Positions 4,334 to 50,849 of a DNA stretch of 64,000 bases are shown here, piece by piece. The translations under genes were made by a program, and so were the position numbers. Positions within the stretch are counted from its first letter, which is position 1, and every line of letters starts with the position of its first letter. Under the pieces are notes generated by a model. It worked only from the letters and a program-made list of their open reading frames with translations. It was not told where the DNA came from and made no database searches. The stretch is from Octopus sinensis (lineage: Eukaryota), in NCBI RefSeq assembly GCF_006345805.1, contig NC_043007.1:58032001-58096000 (forward strand). The letters run 5' to 3'.

Positions 4334-4550
4334 AACGGCGAGCTTGCAGAATCGTTAGCACGCCGGGCAATATGTTTTGGGGCATTTCGTCTGCTGCTAC
4401 ATCCTGATTTCAAATCCCACTGAGGTCGACTTTGACTTTCATCTTTTTGGCGTCGATAAATTAAACACCAGTGAAACACTGGGGCAGATGTGATCGACTT
4501 ACTCTCTCGCCCCAAATTTCAGGCCTTGTACGTATACTAGAAAGGCTATT
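4334..4550 (+). mobile_element. tRNA-derived SINE, family B
   Basis: ggcgagcttgcagaatcgttagcacgccggg...gatttcaaatcc...gaggtcgactttgactttcatc...gtcgataaattaa, homologous to copies at 18839, 26045, 27306, 28588 and 49141. Confidence 0.85.
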
Positions 4551-7660: not shown

Positions 7661-8741
7661 TATTGCTGTATTTCGGGATGGTCATTTTTTTCTTGCCTTT
7701 TTCTTTTCTTTTCCTTTTTTTCTTTGCCAAATAAACTCAAGGAGCTAAACATAGAGGGGACAAACAAGGACAGACAAAGGGATTAAGTCGATTGCATCGA
7801 TCTTCACTCGTTTATTACTGTTCTTATTCTAACTCATGTCTATTGTCCGGAAATCTTTTGTCACACATCTGTGACCTCTTCAGTGACACTTTTCATTTTC
7901 GTCTGGGCTCTTGCTCCACTTACTCCATCCTGCTTTTCTATGATGCGTATACTTATGTGCGCATGCGTTTGCATTCGTGTTTGTGTGTGCGTGTGTATGT
8001 GTGTGTATGCGTGTGTGTGTGTATGCTTGTATGTGTGTCATTACAGTTAGCAGCAGTAGGGCCTTCCCCTCAGCCCCTTCCGCTCACCACGTTGTGCTGC
8101 TGCTGTCCTAGGACCCAAAAATATGGTACAGTTCCTGTATCCCTCTGTGTTTGTGTCTTTGCCCACGGTGTTGCCATCATGATAGTTGTTGTTGTTGTTG
8201 TTATTGACCATCGTTGTCATCGCCGCTGCTGCTGTCGTTGATAGTTGTGTTGTTGATACTGTTGCGGCCATCTGTGAAGTTATTGTGTGTGTATTTGTGT
8301 ATATGGGTTCGCTTTTATGTTGTTTGTATCCATGCCCTTTATATAGATTTATTTATTTATTTTTAAAATTTTCTTATCTATCTCTATTCCTTATATTTAT
8401 CACAGGTATGTGACAAATATATTTATTTATTTTTTATTTATCTCTCTTTATTTCTTATATGTATCACAGATATTTGCATATATGTCTATTGTGTGTGAAT
8501 TACTCTGTTTGTGTCATTGTTTTATTTATTATCATTTCCTCCCTCATCTCCTCTCTTTTGTTTCTAGTCATGGGGTGTGGTGGGGAGTGATATTGTTCCA
8601 TTTGTGTTTTTTATTCAGGCTCGGACTGTCTACTGCTATGTGTGTAGTCTCTGTGATCTAAGTGTCGTGACAGTTTTATGCGTCGATAATACTTAAACAT
8701 CTGGCAAAAAAAAAAAAATGACCATCCCGAAATACAACAAT
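7661..8741. mobile_element. Pair of inverted termini about 1.08 kb apart (MITE-like or non-autonomous DNA element)
   Basis: 7661-7697 tattgctgtatttcgggatggtcatttttttcttgcc is the near reverse complement of 8703-8741 ggcaaaaaaaaaaaaatgaccatcccgaaatacaacaat. Confidence 0.45.
7738..7800 (-). mobile_element. SINE family B 3' fragment
   Basis: gctaaacatagaggggacaaacaaggacagacaaagggattaagtcgattgcatcga matches 27152-27209. Confidence 0.8.
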
Positions 8742-18838: not shown

Positions 18839-19060
18839 AAGGCGGTGACATCGCAGGGTCGTCAGTACGTCGGGAAAATGCTTTCTGGCATTTTTTCCGA
18901 CGTTTTATTTTTAGCATGAGATGAAATCGAGGTAAAATTTGCCTTTCATCCTTTTGGAGGTCGATAAAGTAAGCACCAATCGAGCACTGGGGTCGATATA
19001 ATCGATTAACTCCACCTCTCCCTATAATTGCTGGACTTGTGCCAAAGTTAGAAAGAGTTA
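18839..19060 (+). mobile_element. SINE family B (diverged)
   Basis: aaggcggtga...tttgcctttcatccttttggaggtcgataaagtaagcacca...ctggggtcgatataatcga. Confidence 0.8.
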
Positions 19061-26044: not shown

Positions 26045-26238
26045 AAGGCGGTGAGCTGGCAGACTTGTTAGCACGCTGGACGAAGTGATTAGCAGTATTT
26101 CGCCCGTCGCTACGTCCTGAGTTCAAATTCCACCGAGGATCGACTTTGGTTTCCATCCATTCGGAGGCGATAAATTGTGTACCAGTTACGCACTGAGATC
26201 GATATAATCGACTGTCCCCATTTCCCGAATTACAAGCT
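26045..26238 (+). mobile_element. SINE family B
   Basis: aaggcggtgagctggcag...gagttcaaattcc..gatcgactttgg.ttccatcc.ttcggaggcgataaatt..taccagttacgcactg. Confidence 0.85.
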
Positions 26239-26240
26239 TT

Positions 26241-26490
26241 ATGAAGAAGAGAGAGGATGGGGCCAATAAACTGTCCACAGTCTGTCTACCCTATGTGAAA
26301 GGCCTCTCCGAAAAGATACAAAAGATATGCGACCCATATGACATCAGGACAGTATTCAAGAATAATACACTTCGCAAATATCTCCTTCGAGTAAAACCAC
26401 CAAGACACCTGATGAAGGCTAGCCGAAACGATGTGTTAGCAGCAAACAAGATGAGGAAAAATATGCGTCAAATGTAAATAATGTAAATAA
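26241..26490 (+). mobile_element. Penelope-like element fragment (Poseidon-type RT C-terminal motif) joined to a hammerhead-bearing tail
   Basis: VCLPYVKGLSEKIQKICDPYDIRTVFKNNTLRKYLLRVKP fits the PLE LPY.xG.SE.I...I.x.FK...L motif. Immediately followed by caagacacctgatgaagg...aaacaagatgagg..aatgtaaataat, which matches 38638-38735. Confidence 0.75.
26404..26437 (+). ncRNA. Minimal type I hammerhead ribozyme-like motif (probably inactive copy)
   Basis: GACAC-CUGAUGA-A-GGC(UA)GCC-GAAA-C-GAU-GUGUU. Stem I (GACAC/GUGUU), the CUGAUGA and GAAA core boxes and a short stem II are present; the cleavage triplet is GAU instead of NUH. Confidence 0.6.
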
Positions 26491-26494
26491 TGGC

Positions 26495-28410
26495 TGTGTG
26501 CCTTTGTGTGCGTAGGATGTGTGCAGTGCCTAGTAGTGCTATTTTCTGTAGGTTATATATATTCGTAAGTCCTGGTATTTTGATTATGCGTTTGTCTGAA
26601 TGTTTTTTTATCATACATAATGCGCCTATTATTATAGGGATTGTTTCTGTTTTTAAGCTCCACATTCGATTTATCTCTATTTCCAGGTCTTTGTATTGTG
26701 AAAGTTTCTCCGTTTCTTTTAGCGATACACTGTCATCTGTCGTGATTAATACATCGATTAGAAGGCATTTTTTCTTAATGATCTCTGACAGCTACATCCG
26801 GTCTATTAGCTTTGGTTTCTCTATCTGCGTGTATTGGCATATCCCATAGTATGGTTGCTTTGTCATTTTCCGAAATCTTTTGGGTGTGTTTCTATACCAT
26901 CTTTTGTTTATTGTTATTCCATAGAGCAGACATAGCTTCCACTGTATATAGGCCTCGGGTCTGTCATGTCTGTGGGTATACTCCATCTTAGCCAGGACTG
27001 GGCAGCTAGAGGCAATATGATTTATTGTTTCTTCTCCATCACCACATATTTTGCGGTTACTTGTATATTTCTTCATTATGTGTTTTTGTTGGTTTCTGGT
27101 GGCGAGGCTTTGATCTTGTGCTGCAATTATATTTCTTTACTACCCACAAGGGGCTAAACGCAGAGGGGACAAACAAGGACAGACAAAGGGAGTAAGTCGA
27201 TTACATCGACCCCAGTGCGTAACTGGTACTTAATTTATCGACCTCGAAAGGATGAAAGGCAAAGTCGACCTCGGCGGAATTTGAACTCAGAACGTAACGA
27301 AGTTGAAATTCCGCCGAGGTCGACTTTGCCTTTCATCCTTTCGAGGTCGATAAATTAAGTACCAGTTACGCACTGGGGTCGATGTAATCGACTTACTCCC
27401 TTTGTCTGTCCTTGTTTGTCCCCTCTGCGTTTAGCCCCTTGTGGGTAGTAAAGAAATATAATTGCAGCACATTGTGCTGCAATTAAAAATCTTTCAGTCT
27501 CTGCTTTGAGTCCTGAGCTTCATAACCATTGTTGGTAATTTACTTTGTCTATTTCTTTTCTGTTTAGTTTATCCCAGTATATGCCATGTAAGGGCTTTTC
27601 TTGCCCTCATTTTTTCATGGTATTTGTAGTTCCAGTTTCAGTTTGGATTTCAATTGTTTTACAGCTTTTGCTGTTTCCTCTCTTTCCTCATAGTTTTCAG
27701 GTACTATGACTTCTTTCTTGTGTATATTTCAACTTCTTTAAAGACAGAAAACGGTTTTTTTTTTGTTTTGCTTGTGTTTTATGGCTATTGGTATTAGTTT
27801 TCCTTGCTACTGAATTTGATATTTCTGCAATCCTATGGTAGTTATTTTATAATAGGTTTCTACGTTTATATGACTTTTATCGCCCTCAGTTCGTTGTATA
27901 TATAATCTTTCTACGTCAGATATTGGGTGGTACATCCTATATTCTGTCATTATTTTTCTCGTTTTCCTGTCTAGTTTGGTTAGCTCATTTAGAGTCCAAT
28001 TAAGAATATTGTAACTGTAACTAATAATTGGGACAGCTAGAGTGTTGATATATATTAACTCGTTTTCCGCATTGAGCTCTGTTTTAAGTATTAATCTAAC
28101 TCGTCTATAGTATTCCTTCCTTATCTTCTCTATTATTTGTGTGTGTTGTACCGTATCTAGCTCATTGACTCCAAAGTATTTGTATGCCTGACATTGGTCT
28201 AATTCCTTTACTTCATTTGATTTATCTAGTGTGATATTGTTACTCTTAACTAGTTTTCCTCTTTTCAAGGTTGCTTTGGGACATTTTTCTAAACCGAATT
28301 TCATGTTTATTTCTTTGGTAAATCCATGCACTGTCTGTAGTAATGTTTCTAGTTGTTTATTATTTGCAGCATACAGATTTTGATCATCCATATACAAGAG
28401 ATGGTTGATA
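26495..28410 (-). mobile_element. R4/Dong-clade non-LTR retrotransposon, 5'-truncated and decayed (RT C-half, CCHC finger, REL endonuclease)
   Basis: INHLLYMDD..MKFGLEKC..YKY.G..IRKEYYRRVRLILKTELN (ORF 27807-28583); WL*SSGLKAETERFLIAAQDQSLATRN (across the SINE insert); ICGDGEETINHIASSCPVLAKMEYTHRHD; NRPD..IDV..KETEKLSQYKDLEIE..IIGAL..LQKIALLGTAHILR. Confidence 0.9.
27130..27471. mobile_element. Fold-back (palindromic) SINE family B insertion with 14-bp TSD
   Basis: 27117-27282 is the exact reverse complement of 27306-27471. TSD ttgtgctgcaatta at 27116-27129 and 27472-27485. Removing the insert restores the LINE reading frame FLIAAQDQSL. Confidence 0.9.
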
Positions 28411-28411
28411 T

Positions 28412-28456
<45 letters not shown>

Positions 28457-28516
28457 ACAACACCACCACCACTACCACCACCACCACCACCATTATCATT
28501 ATTATTATTGTTGTTG

Positions 28517-28565
<49 letters not shown>

Positions 28566-28587: not shown

Positions 28588-28800
28588 AGGGTGGTGAGCG
28601 AACAGAATCTTTAGCCCACCGGGTAAAATACTTAGCCGCATTTCGTCCGTCTTTACATTCTGAGTTCTACTGAAATCGAATTTGCCTTTCATCCTTTCAA
28701 GGTCGATAAAATACGTACTAGGTCAGCACTGGGGCAGTTCTAATCGAATTAGTCTCTGCCCAGCAATTTCTTGCCTTGGGGCAAAATTTGAAACCATTAA
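28588..28800 (+). mobile_element. SINE family B (diverged)
   Basis: ggtggtgagc..cagaatc.ttagc..accgggtaaaatacttagc..tgagttc..tttgcctttcatcctttcaaggtcgataaaata.gtac. Confidence 0.8.
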
Positions 28801-28838
28801 CATCATTATCAACATTATAAGTAGTAGTAGTAGTAGTA

Positions 28839-28872
<34 letters not shown>

Positions 28873-30402
28873 TAGTAGTAGTATAGTGCAGAATCCTTAG
28901 AACGTCGCAAAAAATGCTTTGCATGTCTATGCTTGTACTATACTAACTGTAATAAATTTCGTCTTTCACGAAAATTGTAATCTTTTTCTACATAAAACGC
29001 AATATTCACAAATCACATACATGCATACATACACACACGAGTGTGTGTGTCTGCGTATGCATATGTATATATACATGTGGATATGTGTGTGTATTTAGGT
29101 ACATATATTTATTCGCATATACATGTATATATATATATATATATTATTTATACACACACTCACACACATACACACGCACACACGCACACACTCGCACACA
29201 CACATATATATGTGTATATATATACTATTTATATACGCACCTATAATACTTATTTTTTCATATGATAGGCTGTTTTTTCTGTGTATTGGGTGTTATTTTT
29301 AGCAGCTTGAGCTACCAAGTATCAACCGCTTGTTCAACAAAATTCTCTGAAAATGCAAAATAGTCCTCCATGCTTCTCCATCATTTTTTCACATCTTTCA
29401 CTTTCTTTTCCCTCTTCATAGTTCGAATTTCATACCTTCAAAGTAAGTGACTGAACTAACGAATTCACGACTTCAGCAAAATGATTGACAATAGAGGATG
29501 TAGGAATTTTGATTTACTTAAGTGAAAGGAAAGCAATGTTTTTCTGCCGCGTGTTTACATGTCGCCACATAAACCTCAGTATAATGCGCTCAACGTTAAT
29601 GAGCAATCCCTGTGACTCTATTCACATGCACTGCGGGATTATTTAGTTTTCGGGAAAGAATATACAGGTAAGAACACGTGTTTCCTCGGGGACAGCTATA
29701 GTAAGGGAGACCATCGATTCCGGCGAGGTAGGAATTTCGAATCTTCAAACGAAATAAAAAGATAGTTTTCAGTTGACTGCACTCGGGTACATTTTTATCA
29801 GAAATTATTTTATAGACTGAATACTGAAAATGAATTAAAGGGAAAGAGAAAGAAGAAATGATGCCAGGATTAATAAGTGTTTCATTAATCAAACCCTACG
29901 ATGGTGATCTCGGAAGGATTTGAATTCAAAATATATTGAGCCGAAGCAAATACCGTAAGGCATTTTATCCCAAACTCTAACGATTCGACCATTTTGTCTT
30001 TGCAGCCATTACTTGCTGTTATCTTAGTCGTCATAGTCAAACGAATAAGAGCAGACATAGACATCAACCCACAGCCCCACAATTATTGAGCCAACGGAAC
30101 ATTGAGGACGTGACAGTCAGAGCGAGAGAGAGAGAGAGAGAGAGAGAGATGAGGAAGCACTCTGCTACTGCTAAGTTGTTTACTGCTTGAAGACTAGAGC
30201 GAAGTAGCATGAAGTACTTTACCTAAAGGCACAACATACCTATCGAGACCTCATCCATAAATCGTAAGCCAAACACTCTAACCACTAGGTTACGAAGGCC
30301 CAGTTGTATATATTTAAATGGTCAATATATGTATGTGTGTGCTTGCGCGCGCATGCGAGTGTGTAGATAGATACACAGACAGACAGATAGATACATACAT
30401 AA

Positions 30403-41520: not shown

Positions 41521-41522
<2 letters not shown>

Positions 41523-41901
41523 TAATAGTTATCGCCTAGCTAATATGACAGTCCATAAATATAGGACGAGTGCTGCCGTTGATTAGCTCCAAGAGACCAT
41601 CTCCTCTAGCTAGCTGTGTGCATTATTACCTTTGAACAGGGGAGGTCAGCCGCTTCCCCTTGCTGTTCAGGCATCTGGGTTCAGCTACTCTGCATTCATA
41701 AAGGGGAAATACCCTGAAACTAGTCTGCAGATGCCTGACCAGCAAGGGGAAGCGGCTGACCTCCCTTGTTCGAAGGTGATAACAGACACAAGTTCGTTTG
41801 TCACATAACTAGCTAGAGGCGATGGCCTCTTGGAGCTAATCAACGCCAGCACTCATCCTATATTTATAGACTGCCATATTAGCTTGGCGATAACTATTAA
41901 T
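41521..41901. mobile_element. Fold-back MITE with long imperfect TIRs
   Basis: attaatagttatcgcctagctaatatgacagtccataaatatagga..gttgattagctccaagag at the left end is mirrored by ctcttggagctaatcaac..tcctatatttatagactgccatattagcttggcgataactattaat at the right. Inner arms gggaggtcagccgcttccccttgctg / cagcaaggggaagcggctgacctccc. Confidence 0.9.
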
Positions 41902-49140: not shown

Positions 49141-49350
49141 TCGGTGCTTGGCACAAGGCCAGCAATTTCAGTGAAAGGTTTAAGTCGATTACACCGACCC
49201 CAGTATTCAAATAGTACTTAGTTTATTGACCTCGAAATGATAAAAGGCAAAGTCGACCACAGCGGGATTTGAACTCAGAACGTAAAGACAGACGAAATGG
49301 CGCTAAGCATTTCGTCCGGTCTGCTAATGATTCTGCCAACTCGCCGCCTT
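49141..49350 (-). mobile_element. SINE family B, full length
   Basis: Minus strand aaggcggcgagttggcagaatcattagc..gttctgagttcaaatccc..gtcgactttgccttttatc. Confidence 0.85.
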
Positions 49351-49368
49351 AAAGCCACTAGTAATAAT

Positions 49369-49500
49369 CCTTTCAACTGAAGGCACACGGCTTTGAAATT
49401 TTAAGGGAAGGGGACTAGTCGATTACATCGACCCCAGTGTTTCTCTGGTACTTCATTTATCTACCCCGAAAGGATGAAAGACGAAGTCGACCTCGGTGGA
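49369..49500 (-). mobile_element. 5'-truncated SINE family B with 18-bp TSD
   Basis: Flanked by aaagccactagtaataat (49351-49368) and aaagtcactagtaataat (49501-49518), 17/18 identical. Confidence 0.8.
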
Positions 49501-50849
49501 AAAGTCACTAGTAATAATGGCAGATATTCTGTGTGCTGTTGAAAATGCTAAAAATAGCAACCAAATTTCTGCCTCCTCACTTATGAAGCGGCACATTGAA
49601 CAATGTTGACCTCAAGAAAAAATAATAGTCCGGTCATCGCAGCAATAGCCTTTGACATTATGCTTGTCTGTTCCATGAAGGTTGACTTAGGGTTTAAACA
49701 ACGATATTAACTATGTTATATATTAATATAATGTAGTTCTGCATAGACTAAATCTGAATAAAAGATGGGGTAGATATCGTATGCCTTCTGAGAAGTAACA
49801 CGAGGCTCAATGGTGACAATAACAATGATAATGAACAACATTCAATTAGAGAATGTATACAAGCAACTGTGTTAACAAAACAACTCAATATTAGCCAATG
49901 ACAATAACAATGATATCAAGACTAACAACAACAATAATTCTAACGAAACCCACTACAATTTGATGAAGGCATCAAGAAACAAAAAAGAAAAACAAATATG
50001 AAGCCTTCAACCAATGTATAAAGAACTGGTGGAAGACATTTCAGTAGAAAGCCAAAATACAAAAAGAAAAAAAAGAAAAGAAAACGGTGGCATTCACCTA
50101 AAGATGAAGCCTATCGTAATCAAACGTTTTGGGGAAGACATAGGGCAGAGTTAACTTCTTAAATTTTCCTTTCTCACTTAGCTGGCTTTTCGTACATGTA
50201 GCTGCACGCACAATCAGTGTGTCTGTAGTATATTTTTCTCTGTCCCTCTCCTGCCCCTCTCTCTGAATCCCCCCGCTCCCTCTCTCTGTCTTTCTCTCTC
50301 TTTCTCTTTTTCTCTCTCTCTCTCTCTCTCTAATATATATGTGTGTGTGTGTGTGTATGTGTTTGTGTGTGTGTATGTATGTATAATATGTGTGCGTATG
50401 ATATATCTACGTTTCTAATGTATACGTGATGCTCAATATATATATTTTATTCATCTAGATATGTATGTGTATGCTAAGATAAGCATTAGCTGCTTTTTGT
50501 TTCATGCACGATTCTGTGTAACTGTGTGTGTGTGTGTGTGTATGTATTCTCAAATACAAACACATGTGTGTTTGCATTTATATCAATATATAGATGTCAT
50601 TGTACATTTGTTGGACCTCCTGCTTTTATCTTTTTTAGTTAAGGGTGAGTTAATGCTCTAAAACCTGAAGCCTAACCCGAATGCTTGCTACAAAGCAGAC
50701 TCCGATAAAGGATTGCCAGGTGATAATTTTAAATCCGTGTAAGCCATCGTGGAATTTGAACTCGGAACGCAGAATGCAGTAACAAATACAGCAGAACATC
50801 TAGTCCGATTTTCTTACATTTACGCCAGTCCACCGCCTTGGATCGGTAC

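What the first reader, a model, noticed from the sequence alone, without database searches (positions are those of the whole stretch)
27116..27485. Perfect fold-back SINE insertion that copied its own target-site overhang
Seen: the order is TSD (14 bp), SINE 3' part in antisense, 23-nt loop, exact inverted copy of the same SINE part, reverse complement of 13 of the 14 TSD bases, then TSD. Arms are 166 bp and 100% complementary; the empty site restores the Dong ORF. Ordinary twin priming inverts a non-overlapping upstream part and does not duplicate the 3' end or the target. Inference: TPRT cDNA primed at 27129 snapped back (aact/agtt microhomology in the loop), copied itself and stopped almost exactly where the single-stranded target overhang ended. 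That would be a fossil of the staggered-nick intermediate. If transcribed it is an ideal dsRNA (ADAR or siRNA) substrate.
Basis: partly seen in the sequence, partly recalled or inferred. Interest (0 to 1): 0.8.

Follow-up and report, generated by a model that had tools for sequence, protein, structure and literature searches.

The report
Fold-back SINE insertion from cDNA snap-back
A short retrotransposon (SINE) was inserted as a perfect 171-bp hairpin that also contains an inverted copy of its target site, most simply because the new DNA strand folded back and copied itself during insertion; this is a neat natural example of an error already seen in engineered systems.

Summary
It reads: 14-bp target-site duplication (TSD), 153 nt of a SINE 3' part in antisense, a 23-nt turn, an exact inverted copy, the reverse complement of 13 TSD bases, then the TSD again. 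Removing 27130-27485 restores a gap-free alignment of the host LINE to relatives, in protein and in DNA.

SINE homology runs from the left TSD through the loop, so the left arm is the RNA-templated cDNA. The right arm is the copy, and it carries the inverted TSD. All 356 inserted bases can be read as one nascent + strand with two template switches: RNA, then its own cDNA plus primer overhang, then the reciprocal overhang.

Twin priming, two insertions, a MITE-like element and post-insertion fold-back repair each fail on the inverted TSD or need two exact coincidences. A read-level fold-back artefact is unlikely because the flanks are not inverted, but no reads could be checked.

The novelty is overstated. 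cDNA snap-back is a documented junction class for R2-protein insertions, and hairpin-primed inverted duplications are documented at L1 breaks. No same-species DNA outside the window was available, so recurrence and polymorphism are untested.

The parts
27116..27129 (+). Left copy of the 14-bp target-site duplication (TTGTGCTGCAATTA). Its 3' end (27129) is the inferred primer for first-strand cDNA. On the - strand it encodes LIAAQ of the host LINE.
   Evidence: The single-copy state in LINE relatives is shown.
27130..27282 (-). SINE 3' part (153 nt; the SINE sense strand is the - strand). This is the RNA-templated first-strand cDNA and forms the left arm of the palindrome.
   Evidence: Homology to other SINE copies in the window. 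Tail homology to the copy at 7738-7815(-) runs to within 2 nt of the TSD.
27283..27305 (.). 23-nt turn-around. 27283-27300 is still SINE-homologous (reverse complement TCGTTACGTTCTGAGTTC). 27301-27304 (agtt) pairs with 27284-27287 (aact). G at 27305 lies opposite G at 27283 and is the only mismatch. The exact switch point is unresolved: after 27300, or after GAAAT at 27309.
27306..27458 (+). Exact inverted copy of 27130-27282 (SINE sense on the + strand). Inferred to be self-templated snap-back synthesis.
   Evidence: 166/166 complementarity when the TSD part is included.
27459..27471 (+). Reverse complement of 13 of the 14 TSD bases (TAATTGCAGCACA). Inferred copy of the single-stranded primer overhang.
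27472..27485 (+). Right copy of the TSD. Inferred fill-in or template jump across the reciprocal 3' overhang, then ligation to 27486.
26468..28410 (-). Host element: a decayed non-LTR retrotransposon ORF, from the C-terminal part of the reverse transcriptase to the CCHC / restriction-like endonuclease region. The fold-back lies between the RT and the zinc knuckle.
   Evidence: Weak Pfam RVT_1 and zf-RVT hits. 162 homologues, the best at 63% identity. A profile of the C-terminal region hits R2 proteins 9nl3 and 9dou at E about 1e-4. Several stops and a frame change are present.

Best explanation
This is a single aberrant target-primed reverse transcription (TPRT) event.

Proposed sequence of steps:
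1. A LINE endonuclease nicked the + strand between 27129 and the base that is now 27486.
2. The 3'-OH primed reverse transcription of a SINE RNA from its 3' end, making cDNA 27130 to about 27300-27309.
3. Synthesis left the RNA at or just inside the 3' flank of the SINE's anticodon-like stem.
4. The cDNA 3' end folded back on itself with 4-8 nt of pairing and was extended along its own cDNA.
5. Extension continued over the 13-14 nt of target that had become a single-stranded 3' overhang. This means the second strand had already been cut 14 bp away and the ends had separated.
6. Extension stopped where the flanking duplex begins.
7. The strand then crossed to the reciprocal 3' overhang, either by a template jump of the RT or by end-joining fill-in. 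It copied that overhang (27472-27485) and was ligated to 27486.
8. Second-strand synthesis through the hairpin completed the insertion.

What is shown: the anatomy, the real 14-bp duplication, the SINE 3' end at the left TSD, and the RNA-templated identity of the left arm and loop.

What is inferred: the order of the steps, which polymerase did the copying, the stall at RNA structure, and the mode of the final join.
For: - Exact anatomy.
- True duplication: the empty site is gap-free against protein homologues and against two independent LINE DNA copies. The alignment pieces overlap by exactly 14 nt on the filled site.
- SINE tail homology reaches the TSD.
- SINE homology runs through the loop on the left-arm side only. 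The base at 27283 matches the family (GTTCAAATT), while 27305 is the deviant one.
- The inverted TSD lies on the copy arm, next to the right TSD. This is where a 5'->3' continuous + strand synthesis would put it.
- The flanks beyond the TSD are not inverted.
- Precedent: snap-back of TPRT cDNA onto itself, 'or less frequently nearby rDNA', is a scored 5'-junction class for R2-protein insertions in human cells (PMC11371274). Self-annealed hairpins that prime inverted duplications at L1-induced ends, with the TSD preserved, have also been reported.
Against: - Only one locus in one assembly was available. No reads, no second individual and no other DNA of the same species could be examined.
- A perfect 171-bp palindrome with a 13-23 nt spacer is expected to be unstable in vivo. 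It must therefore be very young, or an artefact.
- The turn has a G:G mismatch directly after the proposed aact/agtt primer pairing.
- The copy covers 13 rather than 14 overhang bases.
- The partner LINE of the SINE, and therefore the enzyme involved, is unknown.
Confidence: 0.75

Rival explanations
1. Sequencing or assembly artefact: a fold-back chimera from library preparation, amplification or read consensus, with a plain SINE or an empty site in the real genome.
For: Palindromes are a known artefact class. The arms are suspiciously perfect. No reads were available to check.
Against: Read-level fold-back chimeras invert everything after the turn. Here complementarity ends exactly at 27116/27472, and the right flank continues in normal orientation, colinear with LINE relatives. 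The loop is SINE sequence, not adapter sequence. An artefact has no reason to end at a TSD boundary and then recreate the TSD.
Confidence: 0.08
2. Post-insertion remodelling. An ordinary antisense SINE insertion later suffered a break or a replication template switch inside the SINE. The 3' end folded back, copied the left part, and replaced the SINE 5' part.
For: Hairpin-primed inverted duplications at resected breaks are well documented. The microhomology at the turn fits this model equally well.
Against: It needs two independent exact coincidences. The copy must end within 1 nt of the outer TSD boundary, and the rejoin must fall exactly at the inner boundary of the right TSD. Resection tracts and deletions have no reason to respect either position. 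Both come for free in the TPRT model.
Confidence: 0.08
3. Insertion of a pre-existing palindromic mobile element: a MITE-like element with a TA duplication, or a retrotransposed hairpin master.
For: The window does contain a MITE-like hairpin element at 41521-41901. The fold-back is formally flanked by TA on both sides.
Against: Excising such an element would leave 25 extra bases (an inverted and a direct copy of the target) that no LINE relative has. The element would need to carry 13 nt identical to its target, with a chance of about 4^-13. No second copy of the arms or of the 13-mer exists in the window.
Confidence: 0.04
4. Two priming events: twin priming on one RNA, or TPRT from both overhangs on two SINE RNAs, joined head to head.
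For: Twin priming is the common source of inverted LINE and SINE segments. Both arms end in a SINE 3' tail next to target sequence.
Against: Twin priming inverts an upstream, non-overlapping segment, whereas here both arms are the same 153 nt. Double TPRT predicts arm-TSD directly, with no inverted TSD between them. It also predicts independent truncation points rather than mirror-identical ones.
Confidence: 0.03

Closest known systems
cDNA snap-back 5' junctions in R2-protein (PRINT) transgene insertions (PMC11371274)
   Same: [quoted passage not shown] This leaves antisense element sequence joined to the target.
   Different: Those events are engineered, somatic, rDNA-specific, read-level events in human cells. 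Here it is a natural, assembled SINE insertion. The copy-back ran the whole length of the cDNA and through the primer overhang, so the target site is recorded three times.
Twin priming 5' inversions of L1/Alu (Ostertag and Kazazian model; my own knowledge, and as cited)
   Same: An aberrant TPRT outcome that gives an inverted element segment between intact TSDs.
   Different: Twin priming uses the second overhang as a second primer on an internal RNA site. The two segments are therefore different parts of the RNA, and no target sequence is inverted.
Hairpin-primed inverted duplications and foldbacks at L1 ORF2p-induced breaks (bioRxiv 10.1101/2024.12.14.628481; PMC11702581)
   Same: A 3' overhang self-anneals with 2 bp or more of homology and primes synthesis. 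The result is an inverted duplication at the insertion site with the TSD feature preserved.
   Different: The reported cases duplicate genomic DNA, mostly on the reciprocal end after long resection, or they give chromosome-scale foldbacks. Here the primary RT end (cDNA plus a 13-nt overhang) is duplicated and the locus is otherwise intact.
Hairpin self-priming of second-strand cDNA by reverse transcriptases in vitro, and snap-back synthesis by group II intron-like RTs (PMC11761039; classical cDNA cloning, my own knowledge)
   Same: An RT or DNA polymerase extends a folded-back 3' end along its own product.
   Different: That is in vitro biochemistry or bacterial repair, not a retrotransposon insertion fixed in a genome.

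Membership tests
TPRT-mediated SINE insertion | Flanking direct target-site duplication that is single-copy in the empty site | tested here: met
   The 14/14 TSD is exact. LINE relatives carry one copy. The alignment pieces overlap by exactly 14 nt.
TPRT-mediated SINE insertion | The 3' end of the element abuts the TSD at the priming side, and the 5' end is variable or truncated | tested here: met
   Tail homology to the copy at 7738-7815(-) extends to AAAGAAA, 2 nt from the TSD. The tRNA-like head present in other copies is absent.
TPRT-mediated SINE insertion | An identified partner LINE that shares the SINE 3' tail | not tested
   Only one tail-sharing fragment lies in the window (7738-7815). 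No genome of this species was available.
cDNA snap-back junction class | Sequence next to the cDNA 3' end is the exact complement of the cDNA itself | tested here: met
   166/166, or 170/171.
cDNA snap-back junction class | One arm, not both, continues element homology into the turn, showing it to be the RNA-templated arm | tested here: met
   The left arm plus loop match the SINE family to at least 27300. The reverse reading does not.
cDNA snap-back junction class | Microhomology at the turn | tested here: inconclusive
   aact/agtt (4 nt) is followed by a G:G mismatch. Alternatively AAAT/ATTT (4 nt) applies if the switch came after GAAAT, which all four relatives have at the matching offset. 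The subfamily consensus is needed to decide.
Twin priming | The inverted segment derives from a different, upstream part of the RNA than the direct segment | tested here: not met
   Both arms are the same 153 nt of the SINE.
MITE / foldback DNA transposon | Short fixed-length TSD, a clean empty site after excision, and multiple copies | tested here: not met
   Excision with a TA duplication leaves 25 extra bases that are absent from relatives. There is no second copy in the window. Genome-wide copy number could not be tested.
tRNA-derived SINE with a conserved central core (Nin-DC-like) | A tRNA-like head with A and B boxes, plus a central domain shared across phyla | tested here: inconclusive
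   A B-box-like GAGTTCAAATTCC and a head are present in full copies. A core of about 50 nt recurs in 8 unrelated metagenome contigs. ARAGORN and Rfam call no tRNA. The Nin-DC name rests on memory, as no reference sequence was at hand.
   A C-terminal profile hits R2 proteins in the PDB at E about 1e-4, and zf-RVT is weak. This fits an RLE-type LINE. No phylogeny or Repbase comparison was possible.

The most novel reading that the evidence does not exclude
This would be the first natural, germline record of a complete TPRT snap-back that reads back through the primer overhang. As such it would give single-molecule evidence for two points. First, second-strand cleavage 13-14 bp away and separation of the ends came before completion of the first strand. 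Second, the 5' junction formed by a loss-free jump onto the reciprocal 3' overhang. If such fold-back SINEs recur genome-wide in this lineage, which looks cephalopod-like but was not identified, they would be a systematic source of perfect long hairpin dsRNA for ADAR or siRNA pathways.
Probability: 0.2. Interest if true: 0.65.

Novelty: new member of a known kind. Interest (0 to 1): 0.42.

Why it matters
How non-LTR retrotransposons cut the second strand and form the 5' junction is still debated (for example PMC13486585).

This locus records the target site three times. It therefore fixes three things for one natural event: the polarity of the overhangs (3'), their length (13-14 nt), and the fact that they were single-stranded while first-strand synthesis was still under way. 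It also shows that snap-back, known so far from engineered R2 and L1 systems, leaves heritable products in a wild genome.

In practical terms, it is a 171-bp perfect hairpin. Such a structure is likely to be unstable and polymorphic, and if transcribed it would be a strong dsRNA. A single locus cannot carry much weight. Its main value is as a search template for a genome-wide survey.

Tried and rejected
**Searches for more DNA of this species**
- Exact look-up of eight window ORFs in the protein collection found none.
- A protein search with the open antisense SINE frame found nothing.
- A viral-contig scan with the SINE core found nothing.
- A metagenome scan with the subfamily tail found nothing.
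- A metagenome scan with the core gave eight contigs that share only about 40-50 nt of core, so they are other taxa.
- A scan of bacterial and archaeal genomes found nothing.

As a result I could not determine the consensus of this SINE subfamily, the number of other fold-backs, or the allelic state.

**RNA family searches**
- The Rfam E-value search gave only sub-threshold miRNA-precursor hits (52 bits against a gathering score of 95). These reflect any long hairpin.
- The gathering-threshold search of the whole window found nothing.
- ARAGORN found no tRNA.

**Other checks**
- CpG content was tried as an age clock and dropped. Old SINE copies are not CpG-depleted here.
- A full-text search for the SINE core sequence hit only an unrelated primer.
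- Literature searches for a natural fold-back SINE or LINE with an inverted TSD found no direct precedent. The library misses most subscription papers.

**Explanations considered and rejected**
Twin priming, double TPRT, a MITE, RNA-level copy-back (the inverted target sequence shows that copying happened after joining to DNA), and read-level fold-back chimeras.

Full report
**Observation**

The + strand reads ...tttgatc | TTGTGCTGCAATTA (27116-27129) | tatttctttactaccc...ggcggaattt (27130-27282) | 23-nt turn (27283-27305) | aaattccgcc...gggtagtaaagaaata (27306-27458) | TAATTGCAGCACA (27459-27471) | TTGTGCTGCAATTA (27472-27485) | aaaatctttcag....

- The repeat finder reports arms 27117-27287 and 27301-27471, 171 nt at 99%.
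- A base-by-base check shows one mismatch (27283 G against 27305 G), 166 perfect pairs outside it, and no complementarity beyond 27116/27472.
- Allowing one mismatch, the 14-mer occurs only at the two TSD positions and at the inverted copy. Expected by chance: 0.05.
- The hairpin folds at -341 kcal/mol, z = -38.9 against shuffles.
- It is the only near-perfect long inverted repeat in the window. The others are microsatellite-based or 70-91% identical.

**What the arms are**

The arm sequence, read in sense on the - strand for the left arm, matches seven other diverged copies or fragments in the window at 76-92%. Aligned full copies show a tRNA-like head, a B-box-like GAGTTCAAATTCC, a conserved core (...GTCGACTTTGCCTTTCATCCTTTCGGGGTCGATAAA...) and variable tails.

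- The core alone recurs in eight unrelated JGI metagenome contigs. It is therefore a widely conserved SINE central domain. It resembles the Nin-DC domain, but that name rests on my memory and was not tested.
- ARAGORN and Rfam call nothing.
- The fold-back contains only the 3' 153-171 nt of the SINE.
- Its tail (CTTTGTCTGTCCTTGTTTGTCCCCTCTGCGTTTAGCCCCTTGTGGGTAGTAAAGAAATA) is shared with one other fragment at 7738-7815(-).
- Homology to that fragment runs to AAAGAAA, 2 nt from the TSD. The SINE 3' end therefore abuts the TSD, as expected for priming at 27129.

**The target**

The fold-back sits in a decayed non-LTR retrotransposon on the - strand, roughly 26468-28410.

- Pfam hits to RVT_1 and zf-RVT are weak. 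There are 162 protein homologues.
- A profile of the C-terminal region hits R2 proteins (9nl3, 9dou) at E about 1e-4. The element is therefore of the restriction-like-endonuclease type.
- Joining 27129 to 27486 gives ...GLKAETERFLIAAQDQSLATRN.... This aligns without a gap to the best homologues, and invariant columns span the junction.
- At DNA level, an 83%-identical copy from an independent data set (L010, Logan SRR7158634) and a 74% copy (L001) align colinearly over the empty site.
- Against the filled site, the two alignment pieces overlap by exactly the 14 TSD bases, L010 216-229. The 14 bp are therefore a true duplication.
- The LINE copy has other stops and a frame change, so 'restores the ORF' holds only locally.

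**Which arm is the original**

SINE homology continues from the left arm into the loop. The reverse complement of 27288-27300 is TCGTTACGTTCTG, against TCTTTACGTTCTG in the best-preserved copy c49288 (TCGCTACGTCCTG in c26107). The base at 27283 gives the family's GTTCAAATT, whereas 27305 deviates.

The left arm plus loop is therefore RNA-templated. The right arm is the copy, and the inverted TSD lies at the far end of the copy.

Read 5'->3' on the + strand, all 356 inserted bases can be one nascent strand starting from the nick at 27129|27486:
- RNA-templated: 27130 to about 27300-27309.
- Self-templated: to 27471, which includes the primer's 13 nt.
- Templated by the reciprocal 3' overhang: 27472-27485.
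- Then ligated to 27486.

The copy stops within 1 nt of the boundary between overhang and flanking duplex. This implies that the second strand had already been cut and the ends separated, and that the polymerase did not displace the flanking duplex. These steps are inference.

**Details that stay open**

*(a) The switch point.* There are two readings.
- Reading 1: the cDNA ended at about 27300, and agtt (27301-4) pairs with aact (27284-7). The next base is then a G:G mismatch, which would be a misincorporation or a later substitution.
- Reading 2: all four full-length relatives have GAAAT five bases beyond the ...GA/GC that corresponds to 27299-27300. The locus has GAAAT four bases beyond, at 27305-27309, and 8 of 10 bases match the start of the copy arm.
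  - The cDNA may thus have been RNA-templated to 27309 and switched on AAAT/ATTT.
  - The mismatch then needs no explanation, and the subfamily would natively carry ATTTcAACT...AGTTcAAAT.
- The coincidence required is of similar size under each reading (about 0.003-0.004). The subfamily consensus would decide.

*(b) 13 of 14.* The structure could be a 14-nt stagger with the copy one base short. It could equally be a 13-nt stagger copied fully, plus one untemplated t at 27472 that happens to match 27116 (chance 1/4).

*(c) Where the RT left the RNA.* The turn lies at or just inside the 3' flank of an anticodon-like stem-loop, which in the best-preserved relative folds at -16 kcal/mol. Stalling of the RT there is a suggestion only.

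**Rival explanations**

- Twin priming fails because both arms are the same segment.
- Priming from both overhangs on two RNAs predicts no inverted TSD and independent truncation points.
- A MITE-like element with a TA duplication would leave 25 extra bases that no relative has, and it would need 13 nt of chance identity with its target. An unrelated MITE-like hairpin does exist at 41521-41901.
- Post-insertion fold-back repair needs the copy to end at the outer TSD edge and the rejoin to fall at the inner edge of the other TSD. These are two unrelated exact coincidences.
- RNA-level copy-back is excluded, because target DNA sequence lies inside the palindrome.
- A read-level fold-back chimera would invert the flank as well, and here the flank is normal. 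Other artefacts cannot be excluded without reads.

**Comparison with what is known**

- Snap-back of TPRT cDNA is an explicit 5'-junction category in R2-protein PRINT insertions. [quoted passage not shown]
- L1 work describes self-annealed hairpins that prime inverted duplications with the TSD preserved, as well as foldbacks containing TPRT insertions (PMC11702581 and its 2026 version).
- I found no description of a natural SINE or LINE insertion with an inverted TSD inside the TSDs. The searchable library is incomplete.
- I therefore file this as a new, natural member of a known class of aberrant TPRT products, not as a new mechanism.

**Limits**

- The organism was not identified. The composition (about 36% GC), the microsatellite load and the SINE and LINE types are compatible with a cephalopod. 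Dong and RTE LINEs are reported in octopus (PMC9115989). This remains unverified.
- No DNA of the same species outside the window could be obtained. Recurrence, polymorphism, age and transcription are therefore untested.
- The arms differ at no more than one position in 171, and the TSDs differ at none. This points to a young event, and so does the expected instability of such a palindrome.

**Verdict**

Novelty is modest, and interest is 0.42.

Noticed in passing
window 41521-41901: A MITE-like element of about 380 bp that is almost entirely one imperfect hairpin. The arms 41521-41620 and 41802-41901 are 91% complementary, with further pairing inside. The termini read TAATAGTTATCGCC...GGCGATAACTATTA, and it lies next to a (TAGA)n array. 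It is unrelated to the SINE.
   Followed up: partly
window 7738-7815 (- strand): This fragment shares only the last 80 nt or so (the tail) with the fold-back SINE. It continues into a long A-rich tail, and its upstream sequence is unrelated. It may be the 3' end of the partner LINE, or another SINE family using the same tail.
   Followed up: partly
window 49181-49501 (- strand); also 4398-4507, 18928-19013, 26107-26213, 28650-28757: Other copies of the SINE family with a different tail that ends in GAAAG(G)ATTATTA/(ATT)n. Two of them lie head to tail at 49181-49501. Several are preceded by (ATT)n, which suggests insertion into earlier tails or a TAA/ATT target preference.
   Followed up: no
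L002-L009 (JGI metagenome contigs): The 40-50 nt SINE core (...GACTTTGCCTTTCATCCTTTCNNGGTCGATAAA...) occurs at 88-97% identity in eight contigs from unrelated metagenomes. It is therefore a deeply conserved SINE central domain.
   Followed up: partly
window 28412-28565 and 28820-28887: Trinucleotide arrays (TAC, CAC, ATT, AGT) have expanded inside and next to the reverse-transcriptase remnant. They produce long poly-I/T/V/S runs in the 258-aa ORF.
   Followed up: no
window 27305-27314 versus SINE relatives: The start of the copy arm (GAAATTCCGC) matches 8 of 10 bases of what the cDNA would have read had it continued on the SINE RNA (GAAATGNNGC in four relatives). This may be chance, or it may be the homology that guided the template switch.
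   Followed up: partly
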